Shown here: piece by piece, positions 10,499-53,408 of the stretch
Position numbering within the stretch: the stretch's first letter is position 1
Layout of the letters: each line of letters begins with the position of its first letter
Origin: Phyllobates terribilis
Lineage: Eukaryota
DNA: 64,000 nucleotides
Direction of reading: 5' to 3'
Assembly (NCBI RefSeq): GCF_046119375.1
Contig: NW_027362768.1
Location: forward strand, 29,698,001-29,762,000
Made by a program: the position numbers and the translations under genes
The notes under the pieces: model-generated
Told to the model about the DNA's origin: nothing
The model's input: only the letters and a program-made list of their open reading frames with translations
Database searches by the model: none

Positions 10499-11229
10499 TT
10501 AAAATCAATCATTACTATTGATAGAAGCTGTGGGAGAGAGGACATCACTCACATCTATCACCGCCCCCTTCAGAGAAACAAGCTGCGGGCCAGCGGCGAG
10601 AGAAGACGTGCGCCAGTGCTGTGGTCACCTCTCCCACAGCTTTTATCAGCGCTATTCATTGTGGACAGCATCAGAGGGCGGCGATGAAACCAGCTGTGGT
10701 AGGAGATCGCTGTGCTGCCCCCTGATGACGTCCTGTTCCTAGCCAGGTGGACCGGAGGGAGAAGTGACTGCAGAGCTATCCTCCTGATGACGTATACCAG
10801 TAAACAAAAGTCACAGAAAAAAAAAAGCAAAACCCCCAAATAAAAGAAAAAACAGGTACGGTTATTGGCTGTATAAGGAGAGCAGTAAAGTATTTTACAA
10901 TAAAGCAAATCACAAAAGTGGCTAGGGGTTGAAAATAGATTTTTATAAAGGGCTTTTTAGGTATCAGACCACCTCTTTAGTGAATCAAGGCCTTAGAATG
11001 CAATAGTAAAAGTAGTAATACCTTACCAACCGCCTCCCACTGGCTTATAGACATATGACCACTGTAGCCAATCACTGGCTGCAGCGGTCACATGTCCATA
11101 TCCATACATTAATAATAGAGAAGGAAGAGCAGAGAATGCTGGTGGGCACTGGAAGCGGTGAGGGAAACTTTAGAATTTTTCAGCATTTTAAGTAGTTCTT
11201 AAACATTTTTGGATGTTCAGATAATCATT

Positions 11230-11800
11230 AGATGTAATCGGGGAGAGGGGCACATAGCCCGGAGACCCCCCCGATAGACATGATCAGGGAGAGGGGCTCA
11301 TAGCCCGGAGACACCCCATCCCGATAGATGTGATCAGGGAGAGGGGCTCATAGCCCGGAGACCCCCGATAGATGTGATCAGGGAGGAGGGCTCATAGCCC
11401 GGAGACCCCCGATAGATGTGATCAGGGAGAGGGGCTCATACCCCGGAGACCCCCCCCCTGATAGATGTGATCAGGGAGAGGGGCTCACAGCCCGGAGACC
11501 CCCGATAGATGTGATCAGGGAGAGGGGCTCATAGCCCAGAGACCCCCTGTCCCGATAGATGTGATCAGGGAGAGGGGCTCACAGCCCGGAGACCCCCGAT
11601 AGATGTGATCAGGGAGAGGGGCTCATAGCCCGGAGACCCCCCCCCCCCGATAGATGTGATCAGGGAGAGGGGCTCATAGCCCGGAGACCCCCGATAGATG
11701 TGATCAGGGAGGAGGGCTCATAGCCCGGAGACACCCCGTCCCGATAGATGTGATCAGGGAGAGGGGCTCACAGCCTGGAGACCATGGATACTGCCAGCAC
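11230..11800. repeat. ~42-52-bp minisatellite, ~12 copies, in PRPF38B intron 1
   Basis: Unit GATAGATGTGATCAGGGAGAGGGGCTCATAGCCCGGAGAC(C)n with a variable C tract. Confidence 0.95.
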
Positions 11801-11879
11801 AGATCACGTGTCCTAGGAGCTCAGACACATGGAGGACTCCCGTCAGCCTGGCCCGCACCCAATGCCCCGCTCCACGTAC

Positions 11880-12119
11880 CTTAAAATAGATTTCGTCCAC
11901 CACCTCGTGGTAGGTCTTCAGCTCATACAGCTGCACCTTGAAATATGGAGAGGACAAGATGTTGGTCAGAATCATAGGGTTCAGATTCATAGTCTTTTCA
12001 TTGCCCCACAGCGGCAGTACATTCCCAGGCTTCCCAGAGGGCGCAGATTTGTTCCCACCACCACCTGTCTGAGTGGGTTGCGGGGTCCCCCCGAGGGCCA
12101 CCGCGTTGTTATTCGCCAT
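11880..12119 (-). CDS. PRPF38B: PRPF38B coding exon 1 (MANNNAVALGG...HEVVDEIYFK)
   Basis: ATG at 12119. Translation GNVLPLWGNEKTMNLNPMILTNILSSPYFKVQLYELKTYHEVVDEIYFK matches the recognised PRP38B N-terminus. Donor AAG|GTACGT at 11879. Confidence 0.96.
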
Positions 12120-12420
12120 TTCTAACCGGAGAAAATATGGCGGCTGCCTCACCGGACAGCAGGAAGTGACGTCACGTAGTGGAAAGGAGGAAGAAAGGCG
12201 GCAGAACAGACCGGCTGAGAGAACCAATCAACTTGCTTGAATATGCGGACAAATGAGAACGCTTGTGCCAGGCGCCCAATCAACAAACTTGTGTCTCGTA
12301 GCCATGGAGTAACCAATCAGAACGAAAAACCTTCACCCGCTTGTTTTTTTATTTCATTTTGGCGATTCGAAACTTTATTTCAACCACCCCAGCGAACAGT
12401 GAACATTGTAAGTCGTGAGT
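12120..12420. promoter_or_regulatory. Bidirectional CpG-island promoter shared by PRPF38B and HENMT1
   Basis: CpG-rich. YY1-like AATATGGCGGC at 12134-12144, overlapping ETS-CRE AGGAAGTGACGTCAC at 12161-12175, CCAAT boxes at 12224, 12276 and 12313. Genes are head-to-head. Confidence 0.75.
12330..12407 (+). other. HENMT1: Probable non-coding first exon of HENMT1 (5' boundary unknown)
   Basis: Donor GTAAGT at 12408 and a second GTGAGT at 12415, just downstream of the CCAAT boxes. The ATG-containing exon begins with an acceptor at 23885, so an upstream non-coding exon is needed. Confidence 0.45.
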
Positions 12421-12917
12421 CAGAAGAGACGTAAATGGCCGTCTGCCCGTCCCTGGAGTTTAATAACTGAGCTAAAACTCCCGTTTATCCCGGTGACTCC
12501 GGCTCCCGCTGCGGTTTATCTCCGGGGTATGCGGTTATGAAACTCCTAAGCAGCAGTGTGAGGGATGGAGGCAGCTTTGTTGCTTGGCTCACCCGCGCTG
12601 ATTTGTGTGTTGCTTTGTTTCGGCCTAAAAGTCAATGGAAAAATACATTTTTTCCCTTGTGTGTTTTTTTTCACCTATTTTCGGGGGTAAAATGACTGTT
12701 TTGTGATTACGTTATATTAACTAAGGGTTTTTTTATCTTGATTTTAGCTTTGATTCTGCTTCCAGAATCCTCCCAATATACTTTACTATTAGCTATAAAA
12801 TAAAACCTAATCCTCCTGGCGTCTGGTTGGGGTGTGGGAGACGCCTCCGATCTGCTGCATGAATCCAATGAAAGCTGAAAAAATGTCCTAAATCCAAAAA
12901 CCTGTCTGAGGCGGGTT

Positions 12918-14300
12918 TAGAATAATAATAATAATGGCGCTATAAAAACTAACATATTCCGCAGCACTTTACAAATTTTAGGGGAGACATATACAGACAG
13001 TACAGAATAAGCATATCTCATATCAAAAGGAGTGAGGGCCCTGCTCGCGAGCTTACAGTCTATGAGGAAGTGGGGGAGACACAAAAGGTAAAAAGTACAT
13101 ATATTGTATAATGCAGCCTTCATCTACTAAATAGGATAAATAATAATACATGGACCGGTCGCCTGCCAGTATGCGTACAGTCCTGACCGAGGCTATTATG
13201 TGCATGGTTGGTATGAACCTGAAATTGAAGAAGATTTTAATATGGGGGAAAACTGGGATGGACAGATAGTGTGTGGAGGCGATACGCCAGTCTAAAGAAA
13301 TGGTTTTTTTGGGTCCGCTTGAAACTGTGGGTATTGGAAATTAATCGAACTGTCCTGGGTAGTGCATTCCAAAGAATTGGCGCAGCACGCGAGAAATCTT
13401 GGAGACGGGAGTGGGAAGTTTGGATTATGGAGGATTTTAGTTTTAAGTCATTTGCAGAACGGAGGGCACGTGTAGGGTGGTAGACTGAGACAAGGGAGGA
13501 GATGTAGGGGGATACTGAAGCATGGAGCGCTTTGTGGGTAAGCGTGATAAGTTTAAATTGAACTCTATATTGGATGGGTAACCAATGCAATGACTGGCAC
13601 AGGGAAGAGGCATGGGTGTAGCGGTTGGCGAGGAATATGATCCTTGCTGCTGCGTTAAAGACGGATTGGAGAGGGGAGAGTTTAGTAAGAGGGAGACCGA
13701 TAAGTAGAGAGTTGCAATAGTCAAGACGAGAATGAATAAGAGCTACAGTAAGTTTTTGCTGAGTCAAAGGTGAGAAAAGTCCTGATTCTTGAGATGTTTT
13801 TGAGGTCTAGATGACATGAACGAGCGAGTGATTTGATGTGAGGAGTGAAAGAAAGATCTGAATCAAAAATGACCTCAAGACAGCAGGCTCGTTGCTGGGG
13901 AGAAATGGTTGAGCCACAAACGGAAATGGCAATATCGGGCACAGGTAGGTTAGTGGAGGGAGGAAAGATGAGTAGTTCAGTTTTTGACAGATTCAGTTTT
14001 AGGTAGAGGGAGGACATAATATTAGACACGGCAGAAAGACAATCACTGGTCTTTTGTAATAATGCAGGGGTGATGTCCGGAGCAGAGGTGTATAATTGGG
14101 TGTCATCAGCATAGAGATGGTACTGAAAACCGAATCTACTGATAGTTTGTCCAATAGGAGCAGTGTATAAGGAGAAAAGAAGGGGGCCTAGGACTGATCC
14201 GTGAGGAACCCTGACAGTAAGGGGAAGGAGAGAGGAGGAGGAGCCGGCAAAAGACACAGAGAAGGAGCGGTTAGAGAGATAGGATTTGTGACGTACACAA
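12918..14300 (-). mobile_element. 5'-truncated L2 (CR1/L2 clade) LINE with frameshifted RT
   Basis: [48 protein letters not shown] motifs. (ATT)n tail at 12920-12935. Frameshift near 13730. Confidence 0.9.
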
Positions 14301-19152: not shown

Positions 19153-20964
19153 TTAAAAATGTGGTTCTGTGTGGTAGATTTTAAAGCAGTCAGTGACGCA
19201 TAAGGCTGGCAATGATGGGCATTGTGGGCAATAGTAGCGGGTATCACGCCTCATTCCTCTCTTAGTACATACACAACATCTTTTCTGGGGGTTCCTTCTT
19301 GTTTCCGTTGCTGGAATAAGTACAATAAAATGTCGCTCAGTGAGTCTTTTCACATCCTCAGATTCTAATGGATGAGCGGGGCTAACACTTTGAAAGACAA
19401 GATTTTCAATTACCTTTTCTTGATAATCAAGAAAAGGATCTGAATTTCCTGCTTTTTTGTACAACACAAAAGAATTGTATGTGGCCACCTGAAACAAATA
19501 AATAACCAACTTTTTATACCAGGTATAGGACTTTCTTGATACCTGGTATGGCTGTAGAACCTGGTCTGCAAGGTCCACACCCCCCATGTGTTTGTTGTAG
19601 TCAATGACTGACACAGGTTTTTGCTTCGGAGTGGTGGATCCTAGTTCTACAGTGGCCCTTGTGGCATCTGTGTGGATCGAGCTGAGGACAAAAATATCCC
19701 TCTTATCCCTATATTTCAGGGCAAGCAGCTCTCCGTTGCGTACAGCCCCTGACTGCCCCTTTTGGAACTTTTTGTTGACCAATGGTTGTGGAAACCCCTG
19801 ACGGTTTTTACGGATGGTCCCACAAGCCCCGATGTTGTGTTCAACCAGACTTTTAAATAGGGGTATGCTGGTGTAATAATTGTCCACATATAGATTGTAG
19901 CCTTTTTGAAAAAATGGACTTATCAGTTCCCAAACAATTTTTGCAGATGTCCCCAGATAAGTAGGGCATCCTGGTGGGTTTAGCTGGCTATCTTTCCCCT
20001 CATATATGCGGAAAGCGGATGTGTATCCGGTTGAACTTTCTTTATAGATCTTTATTCCAAACCTTGCCCTTTTAGATGGGATAAATTGCTTGAGGTGCAG
20101 TCTTCCTTTGAATTTTACAAGGGACTCATCTATAGAAATATTTTGTGTTGGGGTGTAGAGGCTTAAGAATTTTTCTGACAAATTTTCAATGATGGGTCTA
20201 ATTTTATATAACCTGTCATGTTCTGGGGCATTTCTGGGCAGGCATTGACTATTGTCGTTAAAATGCCAAAACCGCATGAGCATTTCATAACGGGTCCTAG
20301 GCAGAATGACTGAAAACATAGGGGTGGCTTGAACAGGGTGGTTGGACCAGTAGGATCGAATGCTCGGTTTTTTAACAAGCCCCATGGCAAATGTAAGTCC
20401 TAAAATTTTTTTTATTTCCGGGACATTAGTTGGTGTCCATAAATTTGCCCTAGCATAGTAAGATCGGGGATTCTGGCTTATGAATTGGGATGCATATAAA
20501 TTTGTTTGCACGACAATATGCTCTAGCAAGCTGTCTGTAAAAAACAAATTAAAAAAATGAATTGGTCCAAAATCTTCCACCTCCACATTTATACCAGGAG
20601 TGGCGTTGAAATCAGGGCTGAATGGAGCAGCCGAATCCGAAGCCTCCCATCTGGGAAATGCTAGATCATGTGGCAAAGCCCCTTGTACACTGGGGTGCAC
20701 CAATTCACTAGTAGCAGGGACAGCGCTTGTACTGGGCAGTGTTCCCTGATTTGGAGACGTTTCTCCAGTAGCGCTATTTGCACCTATTGCTGTACTGGTC
20801 CTTGGGCTTGAGGATGGAACAGAATCACTGCTCATTTCTGAGCTCTCAGTGTCGCCACTACTAAAGCCCTCAAAATCCACATCTCCATCTGAGATTGCGC
20901 TGTCATCAGGGTCAGAACACAGCAGGGCATACACCTCTTCTGCGGTATAAGTCTGACGGGCCAT
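19153..20964 (-). CDS. piggyBac transposase, 603 aa
   Basis: DDD triad (SIDES, YVDNYY, GGVDLAD) and C-terminal Cys-rich domain (CCVC...CPQC...LC...CF..YH). Uninterrupted ORF. Confidence 0.9.
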   Translation of the reverse strand: MARQTYTAEEVYALLCSDPDDSAISDGDVDFEGFSSGDTESSEMSSDSVPSSSPRTSTAIGANSATGETSPNQGTLPSTSAVPATSELVHPSVQGALPHDLAFPRWEASDSAAPFSPDFNATPGINVEVEDFGPIHFFNLFFTDSLLEHIVVQTNLYASQFISQNPRSYYARANLWTPTNVPEIKKILGLTFAMGLVKKPSIRSYWSNHPVQATPMFSVILPRTRYEMLMRFWHFNDNSQCLPRNAPEHDRLYKIRPIIENLSEKFLSLYTPTQNISIDESLVKFKGRLHLKQFIPSKRARFGIKIYKESSTGYTSAFRIYEGKDSQLNPPGCPTYLGTSAKIVWELISPFFQKGYNLYVDNYYTSIPLFKSLVEHNIGACGTIRKNRQGFPQPLVNKKFQKGQSGAVRNGELLALKYRDKRDIFVLSSIHTDATRATVELGSTTPKQKPVSVIDYNKHMGGVDLADQVLQPYQVSRKSYTWYKKLVIYLFQVATYNSFVLYKKAGNSDPFLDYQEKVIENLVFQSVSPAHPLESEDVKRLTERHFIVLIPATETRRNPQKRCCVCTKRGMRRDTRYYCPQCPSLPALCVTDCFKIYHTEPHF

Positions 20965-23914: not shown

Positions 23915-24001
23915 ATGGATCCAGTACGTTTTATACCACCACTGTATGAACAACGATATGAATTTGTGAAAGCTTACATCGAGACTCACAAACCCAAAAA
24001 G
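23915..24001 (+). CDS. HENMT1: HENMT1 first coding exon (MDPVRFIPPLYEQRYEFVKAYIETHKPKK)
   Basis: FxPPLYxQRY Hen1 motif. In-frame TAA 9 nt upstream fixes the start. Acceptor tttcag at 23885, donor AAG|GTCAGT. Confidence 0.93.
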
Positions 24002-24220
24002 GTCAGTTTTTATCTATATAACCGGAGATCAGTCTGAATTGGAAGGTCATCTGAACCATAGTATGGGCCTTCTGATATATCCCAGCATGATCTGCAGTAC
24101 TTAGTGTTGTGGGTATGCACATGGCACAGAACGATTGCAGCTAGCCTGGGGTTTAGACAGAAATCATAAATTCCCATAGCAAAACTTAAATGACATCTTC
24201 AGGGGCATTTTCTAACTTAA

Positions 24221-26046: not shown

Positions 26047-27273
26047 CCGTATTTTTCGGACTATAAGACGCACCTAGTTTTAGAGGAGGAAAATAATAAA
26101 AAAAAAATGTAAGCAAAAAATGTTGTCATGATGCACTTTTAAGGGGAAGGGGGTCTTCTGCTGACACTGGTATAGGGGTAATGTCCCCCAATTCTGACAA
26201 TATCCCCCATCCTAGTATATATGCCCCCCCCCTCCTATTATACGTGGTTCCCATCCTGGTATGCCTGGCATCCCTCCATCCTGGTATGCCTGGCATCCCT
26301 TCATCCTGGTATGCCTGGCATCCCTCCATCCTGGTATGCATGGCACCCCTCATCCCTATCCTGGTGTGCATGACACCCCTCATCCCGGTCCTGGTGTGCA
26401 TGGCACCCCTCATCCCGGTATGAATGGCACCCCTCATCCCTGTCCTGGTATGCATGGCACCCCTCATCCCCGTCCTGGTATGCATGGCACCCCTCATCCC
26501 CGTCCTTGTATGTATGGCACCCCTAATCCCTATCCTGGTATGCATGGCACCCCTAATCCCTATCCTGGTATGCATGGCACCCCTAATCCCCATAATGCTG
26601 CGCGTAAAAAAAATAAAATAAACACTCCTACTCACCTTTCTTCTCTCCTCCAGTGCTGCTTCCTGTCTGCCTGCACTGATCTCTCCATGTGAGCCGTGCA
26701 TGGCGTCACTACCATGCGCGGCTCACAAGGAGAGATCAGCTGCCGGAAGTCACTGCTCCCCACGCCGGGACTATGTGCGCGGGGAGCAGTGACTTCACTC
26801 TCCTTCATAGCCGGCACACAGCGTACCTGCGCTGCGGCTCCTGCTGCTGCCGGCTATCGCGTGTGCCCGCTTATTAAAGGGTATGAATATTCACCCCTCC
26901 CCACGCCCATGGGCGTGGAAAGAGGTTGAATATTCATGCCCTTTAACAGCGGGCACAGGCGATTCCGGCAGCAGCAGGAGCCGCAACGCAGCTACACTGT
27001 TTGCCGCTATTAAGGAGCATGAATATTCAGTGCTCCCCACGCCCCATGGGCGTGGGGAGCAGTGAATATTAATTTTCTTTAGCAGCGGGGACAGTGTAGG
27101 CTGCAGCGGGCTTCTGCTGCCTCCTGTGCCCCGCTCCTCCACCGCTACTGCTCCTCCCACACCCCACATATATATACCCCCCCCCCCCCAACATTCGGAC
27201 TATAAGACGCACCCCCCATTTTCCTCCAAAATTTTGGAGGAAAAAAGTGCGTCTTATAGTCCGAAAAATACAG
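26047..27273. mobile_element. Non-autonomous Tc1/pogo-superfamily element with an internal ~24-bp minisatellite (26250-26595)
   Basis: TIR CCGTATTTTTCGGACTATAAGACGCAC, TA TSD. Confidence 0.8.
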
Positions 27274-28093
27274 TAGTTGTTTTTTCTTCCACTGATTTTT
27301 CGATTCCTATACTTTCTGGACATACCCTTTACATTTGGCTCTTTTTTGGTATTTGTATTTATACTATAGACTGATGCTGCATGTTTGCTTGTTGCTGTTA
27401 CTAAAGGGCTTATCTGGGAATTTTAATATTTCTGTGTATGGGGTTAAGAACTAACATTCAGGTAGTTGCTAGCTAGCTACCTGCCTGTTCTGTTGGCGCA
27501 GATCTCTGCCAACTCAGAGTGGTTACAGACCGCTCCTGCCAATGATTCTGCGGCCTCCGCTGATGTCACGTTGAGAGTGCAGCTTCTTCTTTCGCTCTGC
27601 TCTGGTGACGGGGCGTCACTGCGGATGTCAGGCTGATTGACAGCTTGTTCCCCGCTGTTTAACTGCAGGCAGCCAGCTATCAATCAGCAAGCTGTTTGCA
27701 GGGACAGCCTGTCGACAGAGCAGCCCACAAGAGAAAAAGCTGCTCTGTGAATGAGGGGTGAATTGGGGGAATTGCCGGCTGAGCTGGCAGAGATTGTCCT
27801 CGGGCAGAACAAACCGCTACTTAGCAATTACTTGCTTTTTAGTTCTTAGCCCCAGATGCAAAAATATTAAAAATTCTGGATAACCCGTTTAATCATTGGT
27901 TCTAAGTGTGAGGCTGAGGTCTTTGACGGGCATAACAAGAAGCAAACAATCATCAATTATTTTCTAATATTATATATTATAACTGACATCTGCTGAGACT
28001 TTTATAAAGCCATTGCGTGCTAGCCATGCATCAACTGCTGCAAGGGTGACCAGCCTAAATCAGTCCAGAGCCTCTCACCTAGCCAAATCAGTT

Positions 28094-28150
28094 CTCATAC
28101 TTTGCACTGACGAGGGCCAACAGCCCGAAACATTGTGTCTGCAAATTGAG
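28094..28150 (+). ncRNA. Type I (minimal, Penelope/retrozyme-like) hammerhead ribozyme
   Basis: Stem I TTTGCA(28101-06)/TGCAAA(28140-45), core CTGACGA(28107-13), stem II GGGC-CAACA-GCCC, GAAA(28127-30), short stem III, GUC cleavage triplet at 28137-39. Stem I extends via CTCA/TGAG. Confidence 0.8.
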
Positions 28151-28419
28151 ATTCTGATTTGGCTTTTATCCTAAATCATATTGCACGACTCATTAAAGGG
28201 TTGATTGTGACTTGTAGGATTGCTGCTTCCAATAGATGGCGCTATAGAGTTCAAGTCCTCTTTTTCTCTGAAGAGGCAATTTGCATATCCTTTATTCTTT
28301 TCATTTGTTAAAGATCCATTCCTGATTTTAGTATTAAAAACTGCCTATAAGTGCTGTGTGTGAATCTGGCTGCTCGGCAGCCAGTCAGTAACCAGGCTGG
28401 TTTGCGTTTTATTCTGCAG

Positions 28420-28532
28420 GTAGCAGATTTGGGTTGCTCAGAATGTACACTTTTACACAAGCTGAAGTTTCAGGACTGCATTGAGGAGCTTGTTGGTGTG
28501 GACATTGATGAGGAGATATTGAGAAGGAAAGG
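28420..28532 (+). CDS. HENMT1: HENMT1 coding exon 2 (VADLGCSECTLL...VGVDIDEEILRRK), 113 nt
   Basis: SAM-binding motif I (DLGC) and GVDID. Acceptor ttctgcag, donor GG|GTAAGT. Confidence 0.95.
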
Positions 28533-31581: not shown

Positions 31582-33215
31582 GGGAATTCATGGATTCTGG
31601 AAACTATCCACCTCCAAGATCACCATCATCCTGTTCTACAGTTTCAGAGTTATCCATCCAGGATAGTGCTTCATTAGCAGCAGCATCATCATCAGACACC
31701 CACAGCCACATATCACCATCACCCAAAAGGAAGAAAAAACCTTTACCTCCTGGAACCACCATAGATAGGTTTGTGATAAGAACTAGCAGATTAGAAAAAG
31801 AGTTGATTGATGAAAAAATTGCCCAGTTTATTTATGCAACGAACTCTTCTTTCCGTCTGACTGAGAACCCACTTTTCATTAATATGGTTCAGTCACTGAG
31901 ACCAGGATACAGTCCACCCAGCAGAGCTGATGTTGCAGGGAAACTGCTGGATCAAGTGTATGACAGAGAAATGGAGCAATGTGCAACAGCTCTGGAGGGT
32001 AAAATTGTTAACCTAAGTATTGATGGGTGGAGTAATGTCCACAATGATCCTATTGTATGTGCTTGTATAACAACAGAAGAAGGTAAAGTCTTCCTTGCAC
32101 AAACAACTGATACGTCAGGAAATGCACACACAGCAGAATACTTACAAGAAGTGGCAGTAAAAGCTATAGCAACATGTGAACAAAAATTCAAATGTCTAGT
32201 ACGCAGTTTGGTCACTGACAATGCTGCAAACGTATCCAAGATGAGAAGAAATTTAGAAGAGCAGGGAGGGAATACAAAGCTGCTAATAACATATGGTTGC
32301 AGTGCTCATTTGCTGCACCTCTTAGCCAAAGACTTAAGTGTTCCAGAAATAAAGGCTAATGTTGTTGAAATTGCTAAATACTTCCGTAATAATCATTTTG
32401 CTGCAGCAGCTCTGAAAAGGATGGGTGGAACCAAGCTAACGCTCCCACAAGATGTTAGATGGAACTCTGTGGTGGACTGTTTTGAGCAGTATATCAAAAA
32501 CTGGCCTATTCTGATGACACTTTGTGAAGAAAATCGAGATAAAATAGATGGCACTGTCACGGTCAAAATCCTCAACATTGGGCTTAAGAGAAATGTTGAA
32601 CATATGCTGAGCTTCCTGAAACCCATCTCTCAAGCTTTAAACAAAATACAGAAAAATAGCTGTTTTATTGCGGATGCTGTTGAAATTTGGAAGGAACTGA
32701 GTGAACACTTAAAAACAGAACTACACATGGACAGAATTAAATTACAAGCAGTAAACAAACGAATGGGACAAGCACTGACTCCAGCTCATTTTTTGGCAAA
32801 TATTGTCAATATCCAATATCAGGGTCAAAACCTAAGTGCTGAGGAAGAGGAGTTAGCTATGACATGGGTATCCAGCAATCATCCATCTTTAATGCCAACT
32901 ATAATAAACTTCAGAGCTAAGGGGGAACCATTCAAGAAATATATGTTTGCTGAAGATATTTTAAGGAAGGTCACACCAGTAAACTGGTGGAAGTCACTTA
33001 AGCGCTTGGATTTAGAGACTGTTCAAGTAATGATTTCACTTTTAACAGCAGTAGCTTCTTCTGCAGGCGTTGAAAGAATATTCTCTTCCTTTGGACTCAT
33101 TCATTCTAAATTGAGAAATCTGTTGGGACCCAATAAAGCAGGAAAGCTTGTTTTTCTTTTCCAGATTATGAATAGGAACAAAGAAGAAGATGATGATGAA
33201 GATGACGACGAGTGA
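31582..33215 (+). CDS. hAT transposase exon 2 (catalytic and dimerization domains); spliced product 611 aa
   Basis: Acceptor tttttgtttag at 31581 keeps the frame into ATG 31590. Motifs IDGW, VTDNAAN, CSAH, VRWNS and SAGVERIFS are intact. AATAAA at 33387. Confidence 0.88.
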
Positions 33216-41219: not shown

Positions 41220-41350
41220 CCGTATATAAACGAGTATAAGCCGACCTGAATATAAGCCGAGGCCCCTAATTTTACCACACAAAACTGGGAAAACTTATTG
41301 AATCGAGTATAAGCCTAGGGTGGGAAATGCAGCAGCTACTGGTAAATTGG
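41220..41350. mobile_element. Left end of a pogo/Tc2-like non-autonomous element that hosts the 28-bp minisatellite
   Basis: TA CCGTATATAAACGAGTATAAGCCGA terminus. No matching right end was found. Confidence 0.55.
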
Positions 41351-43500
41351 AGCCCCATATAATGCTCCATACAGGATGGGCCCCATATAATGCTCCATGC
41401 ATAATGGGCCCCATATAATGCTCCATGCATAATGGGCCCCATATAATGCTCCATGCATAATGGGCCCCATATAATGCTCCATGCATAATGGGCCCCATAT
41501 AATGCTCCATGCATAATGGGCCCCATATAATGCTCCATGCATAATGGGCCCCATATAATGCTCCATGCATAATGGGCCCCATATAATGCTCCATGCTGTA
41601 TGAGCCCCATATAATGCTCCATGCTGTATGAGCCCCATATAATGCTCCATGCTGTATGAGCCCCATATAATGCTCCATGCTGTATGAGCCCCATATAATG
41701 CTCCATGCTGGATGGGCCCCATATAATGCTCCATGCTGGATGGGCCCCATATAATGCTCCATGCTGGATGGACCCCATATAATGCTCCATGCTGGATGGG
41801 CCCCATATAATGCTCCATGCTGGATGGGCCCCATATAATGCTCCATGCTGGATGGGCCCCATATAATGCTCCATGCTGGATGGGCCCCATATAATGCTCC
41901 ATGCTGGATGGGCCCCATATAATGCTCCATGCTGGATGGGCCCCATATAATGCTCCATGCTGGATGGGCCCCATATAATGCTCCATGCTGGATGGGCCCC
42001 ATATAATCCTCCATGCTGGATGGGCCCCATATAATCCTCCATGCTGGATGGGCCCCATATAATGCTCCATGCTGTATGAGCCCCATATAATGCTCCATGC
42101 TGTATGAGCCCCATATAATGCTCCATGCTGGATGGGCCCCATATAGTGCTAAATGCTGGATGGGCCCCATATAGTGCTCCATGTTGGATGGGCCCCATAT
42201 AGTGCTCCATGCTGGATGGGCCCCATATAGTGCTCCATGCTGGATGGGCCCCATATAGTGCTCCATGCTGGATGGGCCCCATATAATGCTCCATGCTGCA
42301 TGGGCCCCATAAAGTGCTCCATGCTGGATGGGCCACATATAGTGCTCCATGCTGGATGGGCCCCATATAATGCCCCATTCTGGATGGGCCCCATATAATG
42401 CCCCATTCTGGATGGGCCCCATATAATGCCCCATTCTGGATGAGCCCCATATAATGCTCCATGCTGTATGATCCCCATATAATGCTCCATGCTGTATGAG
42501 CCCCATATAATGCTCCATGTTGTATGAGCCCCATATAATGCTCCATGTTGTATGGGCCCCATATAATGCTCCATGCTGTATGGGCCCCATATAGTGCTAA
42601 ATGCTGGATGGGCCCCATATAGTGCTCCATGCTGGATGGGCCCCATATAGTGCTCCATGCTGGATGGGCCCCATATAGTGCTCCATGCTGGATGGGCCCC
42701 ATATAATGCTCCATGCTGCATGGGCCCCATAAAGTGCTCCATGCTGCATGGGCCCCATATAATGCTCCATGCTGCATGGGCCCCATAAAGTGCTCCATGC
42801 TGGATGGGCCCCATATAGTGCTCCATGCTGGATGGGCCCCATATAATGCTCCATGCTGGATGGGCCCCATATAATGCCCCATGCTGCATGGGCCCCATAA
42901 AGTGCTCCATGCTGGATGGGCCCCATATAATGCTCCATGCTGGATGGGCCCCATATAATGCCCCATTCTGGATGAGCCCCATATAATGCTCCATGCTGTA
43001 TGAGCCCCATATAATGCTCCATGCTGTATGAGCCCCATATAATGCTCCATGCTGTATGAGCCCCATATAATGCTCCATGCTGGATGGGCCCCATATAATG
43101 CTCCATGCTGGATGGGCGCCATATAATGCTCCATGCTGGATGGGCCCCATATAATGCTCCATGCTGGATGAACCCCATATAATGCTCCATGCTGGATGGG
43201 CCCCATATAATGCTTCATGCAGGATGGGCCCCATATAATGCTCCATGCTGGATGGGCCCCATATAATGCTCCATGCTGGATGGGCCCCATATAATGCTCC
43301 ATGCTGGATGGGCCCCATATAATGCTCCATGCTGGATGGGCCCCATATAATGCTCCATGCTGGATGGGCCCCATATAATGCTCCATGCTGGATGGGCCCC
43401 ATATAATGCTTCATGCAGGATGGGCCCCATATAATGCTCCATGCTGGATGGGCCCCATATAATGCTCTATGCTGGATGGGCCCCATATAATGCTCCATAC
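41350..43500. repeat. 28-bp minisatellite, ~77 copies (GGCCCCATATAATGCTCCATGCTGGATG)
   Basis: Directly visible, with block-wise sequence variants. Confidence 0.97.
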
Positions 43501-52339: not shown

Positions 52340-52385
52340 TATAAGACCTCACTGCTCACAGTGCATGTCAGACCAAATGAGAATC

Positions 52386-53408
52386 ATGAGCTCAAAGGAA
52401 CTGTCCAAGGAGTGCAGAGACAGAATTGTGGCAATGCACAGATCTGGCCAAGGTTACAAAAGAATTTCTGCATTACTCAAGGTTCCTAAGAGCACAGTGG
52501 CCTCCATAATCCTTAAATGGAAGAAGTTTGGGACCACCAGATGTTTTCCTAGCCCTGGCAGTCCAGCCAAACTGAGCAATCGTGGGAGCAGAGCCTTGGT
52601 GAGAGAGGTAAAGAAGAACCCCAAGATCACTGTGGCTGAGCTCCAGAGATGCAGTAGGGAGATGGGAGAAAGTTCCACAAAGTCAACTATCATTGCAGCC
52701 CTCCACCAGTCGGGCCTTTATGGCAGAGTGGCCCGACGGAAGCCTCTCTTCAGTGCAAGACATATGAAAGCCTTCATAGAATTTGCTAAAAAACACATGA
52801 AGGACTCACAGACGATGAGAAATAAGATTCTCTGGTCTGATGAGACGAAGATAGAACTTTTTGGTGAGAATTCTAAGCGGCGGTATGTGTGGAGAAAACC
52901 CGGCACTGCTCATCACCTGCCCAATACAATCCCAACAGTGAAACATGGTGGTGGCAGCATCATGCTATGGGGGTGTTTTTCAGCTGCAGGGAAAGGACGA
53001 CTGGTTGCAATTGAAGGAAACATGAATGCGGCCAAGTACAGAGATATCCTTAATGAAAACCTCTTCCAGAGTGCTCTGGACCCCAGACTTGGCCGAAGGT
53101 TCACCTTCCAACAAGACAATTACCCTATGCATACAGCTAAAATAACAAAGGAGTGGCTTCAGAACAACTCTGTGACCATTCTTGACTGTCCCTGCCAGAG
53201 CCCTGACCTAAACCCAATTGAGCATCTCTGGAGAGACCTGAAAATGGCTGTCCACCAACGTTCACCATCCAACCTGACGGAACTGGTGAGGATCTGCAAG
53301 GAAGAATAGCAGAGGATCCCCAAATCCAGGTGTTAAAAACTTGTTGCATCATTCCTAAGAAGACTTGTGGCTGTACTAGCTCAAAAGGGTGCTTCTACTC
53401 AATACTGA
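52386..53408 (+). pseudogene. Tc1 transposase pseudogene
   Basis: WSDETK, FQQDN and SPDLNPIEHLW with 34-aa spacing. Premature TAG (53307) and TAA ahead of the natural ...KGASTQY* end. Confidence 0.85.

What the first reader, a model, noticed from the sequence alone, without database searches (positions are those of the whole stretch)
28094..28150. Complete hammerhead ribozyme in sense orientation inside a HENMT1 intron
Seen: all type I hammerhead elements are present in order: 6-bp stem I (plus a bulged 4-bp extension), CUGACGA, 4-bp stem II with a 5-nt loop, GAAA, a 3-bp stem III and GUC, predicting cleavage after 28139. It sits in a ~300-bp short repeat-like element (~27980-28290), 280 nt upstream of the HENMT1 exon at 28420 and on the transcribed strand. 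Established: minimal hammerheads with very short helix III occur in Penelope elements and amphibian retrozyme/satellite-2 repeats and often need dimerisation to cleave. Inference: this is probably a member of a retrozyme-like family, and it could nick HENMT1 pre-mRNA or seed circRNA.
Basis: partly seen in the sequence, partly recalled or inferred. Interest (0 to 1): 0.75.

Follow-up and report, generated by a model that had tools for sequence, protein, structure and literature searches.

The report
Retrozyme hammerhead copy in HENMT1 intron
The self-cutting "hammerhead" RNA motif is really there and looks intact, but it belongs to one truncated copy of a hugely abundant, already well-described kind of frog jumping-gene repeat that landed in an intron of HENMT1, so it is ordinary.

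Summary
All parts of a canonical type I hammerhead lie at 28093-28151 on the + strand, and the predicted cut falls after C28139. A descriptor scan finds one such motif in the window and none in 300 shuffles. Rfam Hammerhead_1 aligns end to end at 26.7 bits, below its gathering score of 34, with E 4e-5 on the short stretch.

The motif sits in a 229-bp repeat copy at 28060-28288, not at ~27980-28290. Public contigs show this stretch is massively repeated in this frog and a second species. It also occurs in presumed RNA runs of two species. In the family, the well-supported variants spare the catalytic core, and helix II shows a matched compensatory change.

The copy lies sense in the 4.4-kb intron between the first two coding exons of HENMT1, 281 nt before the exon.

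It is a lone, truncated monomer with a weak 3-bp helix III. Published amphibian ribozymes of this type cut poorly unless dimeric. A single site cannot release a circle. Retrozyme copies in introns are common in Xenopus.

Cleavage could not be tested because no raw RNA reads were available. This scan has noted many such motifs elsewhere in this genome.

Verdict: real motif, known kind, low interest.

The parts
28060..28288 (+). Truncated single copy (229 bp, 42% G+C) of a very abundant hammerhead-bearing repeat family (non-LTR retrozyme / Penelope-pLTR-derived kind)
   Evidence: contigs of two DNA runs (10,935 and 14,055 laid) and two presumed RNA runs pile up on 28060-28288 only. The flanks 27908-28047 and 28300-28410 are unique. 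At 28060 the family runs on leftwards with letters this copy lacks. At 28287/28288 the copies diverge. G+C.
28081..28164 (+). Whole hairpin: hammerhead plus its extended, interrupted helix I (11 + 5 + 6 bp)
   Evidence: Fold of 28078-28168 is -35.8 kcal/mol, z = -6.3 against 200 shuffles.
28101..28145 (+). Hammerhead type I core as aligned by Rfam RF00163 (6-bp helix I to 6-bp helix I)
   Evidence: 26.7 bits, gathering score 34, E 4.2e-05, model positions 1-45 of 45.
28107..28113 (+). Core strand C3-A9 (CUGACGA; the free position N7 is C)
   Evidence: Family variant C>T at 28111 only.
28114..28126 (+). Helix II (GGGC/GCCC) with loop 2 CAACA
   Evidence: In the family, 28117 C>G and 28123 G>C occur at matched shares in four runs. 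The same 13 letters occur in unrelated hammerheads of metagenome contigs.
28127..28139 (+). G12 A13 A14, helix III (3 bp, loop UUG) and cleavage-site C17 at 28139
   Evidence: The strand 28130-28138 pairs with itself at 8 of 9 positions, which fits the dimer mode. 28133 is U here and C in 95-100% of the family.
28098..28100 (+). Internal loop 1 of helix I (UAC, opposite U28146), the expected partner of loop 2
   Evidence: Position read. Its role is inferred from the canonical metazoan type I build described in PMC4209133.
24002..28419 (+). HENMT1 intron that holds the element (between coding exons 23915-24001 and 28420-28532)
   Evidence: the two exons match residues 12-37 and 38-72 of human HENMT1 chain 4xcx_A. 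GT at 24002 and AG at 28418-28419 are seen.

Best explanation
This is a passenger. A non-autonomous, hammerhead-bearing retroelement of the amphibian retrozyme / satellite-2 kind, which is related to the terminal repeats of Penelope-like elements, inserted into the first coding intron of HENMT1. Only 229 bp of its roughly 330-bp unit are recognisable. In the family's life cycle, tandem units are transcribed. Neighbouring hammerheads pair through their short, near-palindromic helix III to form an active double hammerhead, and each unit is cut after C17. The monomers are then circularised by a tRNA ligase and copied back into DNA by a Penelope-type reverse transcriptase (established for the class, inferred here). 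This copy keeps an intact core but has one ribozyme, no partner in cis, a 3-bp helix III and a predicted competing fold. It probably cuts HENMT1 pre-mRNA rarely or not at all, cannot release a circle, and leaves with the spliced intron.
For: The motif is complete, with 0 of 300 shuffles matching, and Rfam RF00163 gives 26.7 bits at E 4.2e-05. Family membership: 28060-28288 is covered by about 11,000-14,000 contigs at 80% likeness or more in two species and by contigs of two presumed RNA runs, while the flanks are unique. The best-supported family variants in the ribozyme fall at tolerant places: linker 28092, loop 1 28099, helix I 28103, N7 28111, loop 3 28133 and 28134, and the helix II pair 28117/28123. 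That pair changes C-G to G-C at matched shares: 15.5/16.4%, 87/81%, 11.2/10.5% and 33/20%. Some family contigs go back from 28285 to 28069, which indicates tandem units. The build (helix I 6 bp, helix II 4 bp, short palindromic helix III) is the canonical metazoan type I build (PMC4209133). Amphibian units measure 330-350 nt and are weak as monomers but efficient as dimers (PMC7229834). In Xenopus, 44% of retrozyme copies overlap introns. The hammerhead fold is -31.3 kcal/mol against -35.3 for a fold that ties up core bases 28110-28113 with 28133-28136. No reverse transcriptase gene was found among the five window ORFs scanned with Pfam.
Against: Cleavage was not measured in any way. The Rfam score is below the gathering score. 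All read evidence comes from contigs, so copy number, RNA ends and linkage of the two helix II changes on one molecule are not shown. The 'RNA' label of runs X15 and X17 is a guess by the tool. No target-site duplication was found, so the mode of insertion is inferred. The core is intact and helix I is long and stable, so some cutting in vivo, or cutting with a family RNA as a partner in trans, cannot be excluded.
Confidence: 0.82

Rival explanations
1. The ribozyme is active in cis and matters for the host. It cuts nascent HENMT1 pre-mRNA 281 nt before the second coding exon, which lowers or times the output of the piRNA 2'-O-methyltransferase, for example by uncoupling splicing or promoting early termination.
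For: The core is intact, the orientation is sense, and the copy sits close to the 3' splice site. Loop 1 and loop 2 are in the canonical places. The 2026 preprint reports depletion of retrozymes from introns after normalising for size, which implies that genic copies can be harmful.
Against: The copy is alone, with a 3-bp helix III, and the class cuts poorly as single motifs. A more stable competing fold is predicted. In absolute terms 42-44% of Xenopus copies are intronic, and this scan lists many other sense intronic hammerheads in this genome, so there is nothing special about this site. No RNA data exist for the locus.
Confidence: 0.08
2. It is the 3' remnant of a 5'-truncated autonomous Penelope-like element (one terminal repeat) rather than a monomer of a tandem retrozyme family.
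For: Most Penelope insertions are 5'-truncated and keep a single terminal repeat, and nearly every Xenopus retrozyme family is sister to a Penelope terminal repeat. This copy loses similarity to the family on its left side, while many family copies share its right end at 28287/28288.
Against: The ribozyme has the canonical build (helix I 6 bp, helix II 4 bp, a helix III). It does not have the Penelope 'minimal' build (helix II 7-8 bp, helix I 4-5 bp, no helix III). Tandem-type joints occur in the family. Earlier notes of this scan describe about 330-bp tandem units in this genome (not tested here). None of the five window ORFs scanned carries a reverse transcriptase or GIY-YIG domain. The two readings differ little in mechanism.
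Confidence: 0.15
3. It is a chance look-alike inside an unrelated hairpin repeat, not a hammerhead.
For: Rfam gave no hit at gathering level or in a 371-base lax search. The loose sequence pattern alone is not rare (4 matches against 2.4 expected).
Against: 0 of 300 shuffles match when the helices are required. The Rfam alignment is full length at E 4.2e-05 once the filters are relaxed. There is a compensatory change in helix II, and the well-supported family variants avoid the core. The same helix II and loop 2 occur with different, still paired, helices I and III in unrelated contigs. Rfam in gathering mode also missed those textbook motifs.
Confidence: 0.01

Closest known systems
Amphibian non-LTR retrozymes / newt and axolotl satellite-2 repeats (units of 330 and 350 nt with HHR_Amex1/2; PMC7229834)
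   Same: Type I hammerhead with 6-bp helix I, 4-bp helix II and a weak helix III suited to dimer action. AT-leaning non-coding unit, huge copy number, and presence in transcriptomes.
   Different: Here there is one dispersed, truncated 229-bp copy rather than a tandem array. Helix III has 3 pairs and a 3-nt loop, against 1-2 pairs and a tetraloop in the axolotl. The host is a frog. No cleavage or circle was shown.
Xenopus non-LTR retrozyme families, including REP4 (preprint 10.64898/2026.07.22.740005)
   Same: Frog repeats with type I hammerheads, found as evenly scattered monomers and as local tandem arrays. About 44% of copies are in introns, and the families are related to Penelope terminal repeats.
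   Different: I could not compare sequences with those families because none was on hand. Whether this frog is one of the species studied there is unknown to me.
Minimal hammerheads of Penelope-like elements (PMC4209133)
   Same: Retroelement-borne type I hammerheads thought to work as dimers. They occur mostly as single motifs from truncated copies and show low activity in vitro.
   Different: Those have helix II of 7-8 bp, helix I of 4-5 bp and no helix III. This one has the canonical 4-bp helix II, 6-bp helix I and a short helix III.
[quoted passage not shown]
   Same: A type I hammerhead in sense orientation in an intron of a protein-coding gene.
   Different: Those are single-copy and conserved across amniotes, and so are likely domesticated. 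This one is a copy of a high-copy repeat with no evidence of conservation at the site.

Membership tests
Hammerhead ribozyme, type I | Conserved core: C3 U4 G5 A6 N7 G8 A9, G12 A13 A14, A15.1-U16.1, H17 not G, and G10.1-C11.1 closing helix II | tested here: met
   All present at 28107-28113, 28114/28126, 28127-28130 and 28138-28139.
Hammerhead ribozyme, type I | Three helices around the core, with helix I open-ended | tested here: met
   Helix I 6 bp (plus 5 and 11 bp), helix II 4 bp, helix III 3 bp. All are standard pairs.
Hammerhead ribozyme, type I | Covariance-model score at or above the Rfam RF00163 gathering score (34 bits) | tested here: inconclusive
   26.7 bits, full-length alignment, E 4.2e-05 on 95 bases. 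My scaling gives about 0.03 for the whole window and all families. The hit was filtered out. Gathering mode also missed hammerheads with a 6-bp helix III in L001-L008.
Hammerhead ribozyme, type I | Helices supported by compensatory changes among relatives | tested here: met
   Helix II: 28117 C>G with 28123 G>C at matched shares in four runs (linkage on single molecules not shown). Helix I and III have different but paired sequences in contigs that share the core.
Hammerhead ribozyme, type I | Site-specific self-cleavage that leaves 2',3'-cyclic phosphate and 5'-OH ends | not testable with these tools
   All runs on offer were contigs, which cannot show RNA ends.
Metazoan non-LTR retrozyme | Non-coding unit of about 170-400 bp with a type I hammerhead and low G+C | tested here: met
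   229 bp are recognisable, G+C is 42%, and the hammerhead is present. The full unit length comes only from earlier notes and was not measured here.
Metazoan non-LTR retrozyme | Head-to-tail tandem arrangement | tested here: inconclusive
   This copy is single, with no second copy in the window. A family contig goes back from 28285 to 28069, which suggests that tandem units exist elsewhere.
Metazoan non-LTR retrozyme | Expressed as linear and circular RNA monomers | tested here: inconclusive
   Family contigs occur in two runs that the tool guesses to be RNA (X15, X17). Circularity and ends are not visible in contigs.
Penelope-like element minimal hammerhead | Helix II 7-8 bp, helix I 4-5 bp, no helix III, located in a terminal repeat next to an RT/GIY-YIG ORF | tested here: not met
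   Helix II is 4 bp, helix I is 6 bp and helix III is present. None of the five window ORFs scanned has an RT or GIY-YIG domain.

The most novel reading that the evidence does not exclude
The lone hammerhead is active on nascent HENMT1 pre-mRNA, alone or paired in trans with abundant family RNA in germ cells. A retroelement-derived ribozyme would then dampen the enzyme that stabilises piRNAs, the very pathway that silences retroelements.
Probability: 0.03. Interest if true: 0.6.

Novelty: new member of a known kind. Interest (0 to 1): 0.15.

Why it matters
It matters little by itself. It is one more dispersed copy of a published class of ribozyme-bearing repeats, and this scan has already noted many hammerhead motifs in this same genome, several of them sense in introns. 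Its use is as a data point. Sense-oriented intronic copies with intact cores are the natural material for testing whether such ribozymes ever cut host pre-mRNAs, and whether that explains the reported depletion of retrozymes from introns. A practical lesson also follows: Rfam scans at gathering level, or on long stretches, miss these 45-nt motifs.

Tried and rejected
- The Rfam scan of the whole window at gathering level found nothing, and the lax scan of 27950-28320 showed only a chance lncRNA match. The hammerhead appeared only when 95 bases were given.
- No second copy of the element was found in the window by blastn or by repeat search.
- I looked in the window for the family's parts that lie left of 28060 and right of 28288, using letters from the loose ends. 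There were no matches with up to 3 mismatches and no gaps allowed.
- No target-site duplication was found; the longest shared word is 5 nt.
- RNA ends at 28139/28140 could not be tested. No raw-read RNA run holds the locus, and all runs are contigs.
- The viral contig collection holds no match to the core.
- Metagenome contigs share only 28103-28143, so they belong to other elements. They served for comparing helices, not as family copies.
- A full-text search for the 20-letter core string found no paper.
- The look-up of earlier findings by sequence was blank.
- The bacterial-type promoter and terminator scan is irrelevant to an animal genome and was ignored.
- I built no consensus of the repeat family.

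Full report
**Observation**

The sequence at 28081-28164 contains every element of a type I hammerhead in the right order on the + strand.

- Helix I is 28101-28106 paired with 28140-28145 (6 bp).
- An internal loop follows: UAC at 28098-28100 opposite U28146.
- Five more pairs follow (28093-28097 with 28147-28151), then 11 perfect pairs (28081-28091 with 28154-28164).
- The core strand is CUGACGA at 28107-28113.
- Helix II is GGGC/GCCC (28114-28117 with 28123-28126), with loop CAACA.
- GAA is at 28127-28129.
- Helix III is A28130-U28138, C28131-G28137 and A28132-U28136, with loop UUG.

A script confirmed that every pair is a standard pair. The stretch 28078-28168 folds at -35.8 kcal/mol, z = -6.3 against shuffles.

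**Is it more than chance?**

The bare sequence pattern without helices is common: 4 matches against 2.4 expected. A descriptor that also demands the three helices finds exactly this one site in the window. It finds none in 300 dinucleotide-preserving shuffles, even with loosened helix lengths.

Rfam gave nothing for the whole window at gathering level, and nothing relevant for 27950-28320 at E up to 10. When only 28076-28170 was given, Hammerhead_1 (RF00163) aligned over all 45 model positions to 28101-28145. The score was 26.7 bits against a gathering score of 34, with E 4.2e-05. By my own scaling, that corresponds to about 0.03 for the whole window and all families.

The earlier blanks were therefore filter losses. 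Gathering mode also reported none of the hammerheads with a 6-bp helix III in nine metagenome contigs. A sub-gathering score for this 45-nt model is thus weak evidence against the fold.

**The element around it**

All public runs on offer were kept as Logan contigs. I laid four of them on 27600-28410 at 80% likeness.

- Coverage is huge on 28060-28288 and only there. About 10,900 contigs were laid for an independent DNA sample of the same species (X5). About 14,100 were laid for a second species (X9). There were 372 and 85 for two runs that the tool guesses to be RNA (X15, same species; X17, a further species).
- The flank 27908-28047 has no coverage, and 28300-28410 has single-copy-like coverage.
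- At 28060 the family continues leftwards with conserved letters that this copy lacks.
- At 28287/28288 hundreds of contigs stop matching, and what follows agrees poorly (0.38-0.51).
- One contig goes back from 28285 to 28069, as in a tandem array.

Searching the window for the family's missing parts found nothing. There is no second copy in the window and no target-site duplication.

The copy is therefore 229 bp at 28060-28288, with 42% G+C. It is truncated relative to the roughly 330-bp unit that earlier notes of this scan describe for this frog genome (the unit length was not measured here).

**Family variation fits a ribozyme**

Among the best-supported differences, those inside the hammerhead fall at these places:

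- the linker (28092)
- loop 1 (28099)
- helix I (28103)
- the free core position N7 (28111 C>T; 27% in X5, 72% in X15)
- loop 3 (28133 and 28134)
- the helix II pair 28117/28123

At that pair, C>G and G>C occur at matched shares in all four runs: 15.5/16.4%, 87/81%, 11.2/10.5% and 33/20%. That is a C-G to G-C swap.

There are three caveats. The shares are depth-weighted over contigs. The linkage of the two changes on one molecule is not shown. Sixty lower-ranked rows were not listed.

This copy differs from 95-100% of the family at 28133, where it has U and the family has C.

**Independent comparison**

An exact-pattern scan found nine metagenome contigs with the same core, helix II and loop 2. 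They share only 28103-28143 with the window, so they are different elements. Their helices I and III have different sequences that still pair:

| Source | Helix I | Helix III |
|---|---|---|
| This copy | UUUGCA/UGCAAA | 3 bp, loop UUG |
| L001-L008 | ACUGCA/UGCAGU (ACUGUA in L002) | 6 bp, 4-nt loop |
| L009 | ACACCG/CGGUGU | loop-less ACAC/GUGU palindrome |

**Gene context**

I searched the two exons separately by reference.

- Exon 23915-24001 (MDPVRFIPPLYEQRY...KPKK) matches residues 12-37 of human small RNA 2'-O-methyltransferase chain 4xcx_A, with E 1.6e-05.
- Exon 28420-28532 (VADLGC...) matches residues 38-72, with E 6.7e-07.
- GT at 24002 and AG at 28418-28419 bound the intron.

The element therefore lies in the 4.4-kb intron between the first two coding exons of HENMT1. 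It is on the transcribed strand, with C17 281 nt before the exon. The window is otherwise rich in DNA transposons: piggyBac, hAT and Tc1/mariner ORFs. None of the five ORFs scanned with Pfam carries a reverse transcriptase domain.

**How it most likely works**

The build is the canonical metazoan type I hammerhead of PMC4209133: helix I 6 bp, helix II 4 bp, loops 1 and 2, and a short, near-palindromic helix III. It is not the Penelope minimal form.

According to PMC7229834, amphibian retrozyme units of 330-350 nt are transcribed from tandem arrays. They cut weakly as single motifs and efficiently as dimers, and they accumulate as linear and circular monomers, with a tRNA ligase closing the circle. 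The 2026 preprint links such families to the terminal repeats of Penelope-like elements. It also found that only 1 of 9 Xenopus dimer constructs cut in vitro.

Here the helix III strand 28130-28138 pairs with itself at 8 of 9 positions, which suits dimer action. But this copy has no neighbour.

Its hammerhead fold (-31.3 kcal/mol) is less stable than a fold in which 28110-28113 pair with 28133-28136 (-35.3 kcal/mol). That competing helix uses U28133, where the family majority has a C that could not pair with A28113. This last point is read from the sequence and is an inference.

One cut site cannot release a monomer, so circRNA seeding from this locus is not expected.

I conclude, at about 0.8, that the copy is a passenger removed with the intron. 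Cleavage itself was not testable.

**How ordinary is an intronic sense copy?**

In X. tropicalis and X. laevis, 42-44% of retrozyme copies overlap introns, although they are depleted there after normalising for size. This scan has many notes on hammerhead ribozymes in this same genome, including at least 15 that mention sense intronic positions. Two followed-up cases reached the same verdict: an abundant retrozyme or Penelope-type repeat with no sign of a host role. I treated these notes as leads only.

**Verdict**

This is a new member of a known kind, of low interest.

I built no family consensus and referred no step.

Noticed in passing
window 27402-27891: Inverted repeat with 76-nt arms (27402-27477 and 27816-27891, 76% complementary). 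Its right part (27600-27880) is a moderately repeated sequence in the DNA contigs of two species. It looks like a MITE-type insertion just upstream of the retrozyme copy, in the same intron.
   Followed up: no
window 27004-27265: An 83%-complementary 41-nt palindrome (27004-27088), a run of 12 C at about 27178-27189, and a perfect 19-nt inverted repeat (27194-27212 with 27247-27265) around a perfect 13-nt palindrome (27219-27244). This is probably another small foldback repeat.
   Followed up: no
window 41272-43498, - strand: A 704-aa ORF without any Pfam match, overlapped by ORFs of 431, 268, 449 and 197 aa in other frames of the same strand. A 2-kb stretch almost free of stop codons in several frames suggests a biased or repetitive sequence rather than a gene.
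   Followed up: partly
window 52365-53309, + strand: A 314-aa ORF with the Sleeping Beauty-type HTH, Tc3 HTH and DDE_3 domains. It is a Tc1/mariner transposase that looks open.
   Followed up: partly
window 19153-20964 (-) and 31590-33215 (+): Open piggyBac (603 aa; DDE_Tnp_1_7 at E 3.5e-84) and hAT-like (541 aa; DUF659 plus the hAT dimerisation domain) transposase ORFs.
   Followed up: partly
L001-L009 (metagenome contigs), e.g. L004:700-870: Environmental contigs carry canonical type I hammerheads whose helix II and loop 2 are letter-for-letter the same as in the frog copy. In L001-L008 they have a stable 6-bp helix III. In several contigs a second motif lies 119 nt downstream, and in the one read (L004) it is degenerate, with G12 replaced by A. 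The source organisms are unknown.
   Followed up: partly
window 28101-28145; L001-L009: Method note. Rfam's Hammerhead_1 hit appears only when a very short stretch is searched. Whole-window and gathering-level scans miss it, and they also miss textbook hammerheads in the metagenome contigs.
   Followed up: yes
window 28111, 28117, 28123 (family variants): In the presumed RNA run X15, the sub-type with CUGAUGA and GGGG/CCCC in helix II dominates (72-87%). In DNA of the same species it is a minority (15-27%). A sub-family other than this copy's may therefore be the transcribed one. The shares are depth-weighted contig figures.
   Followed up: no
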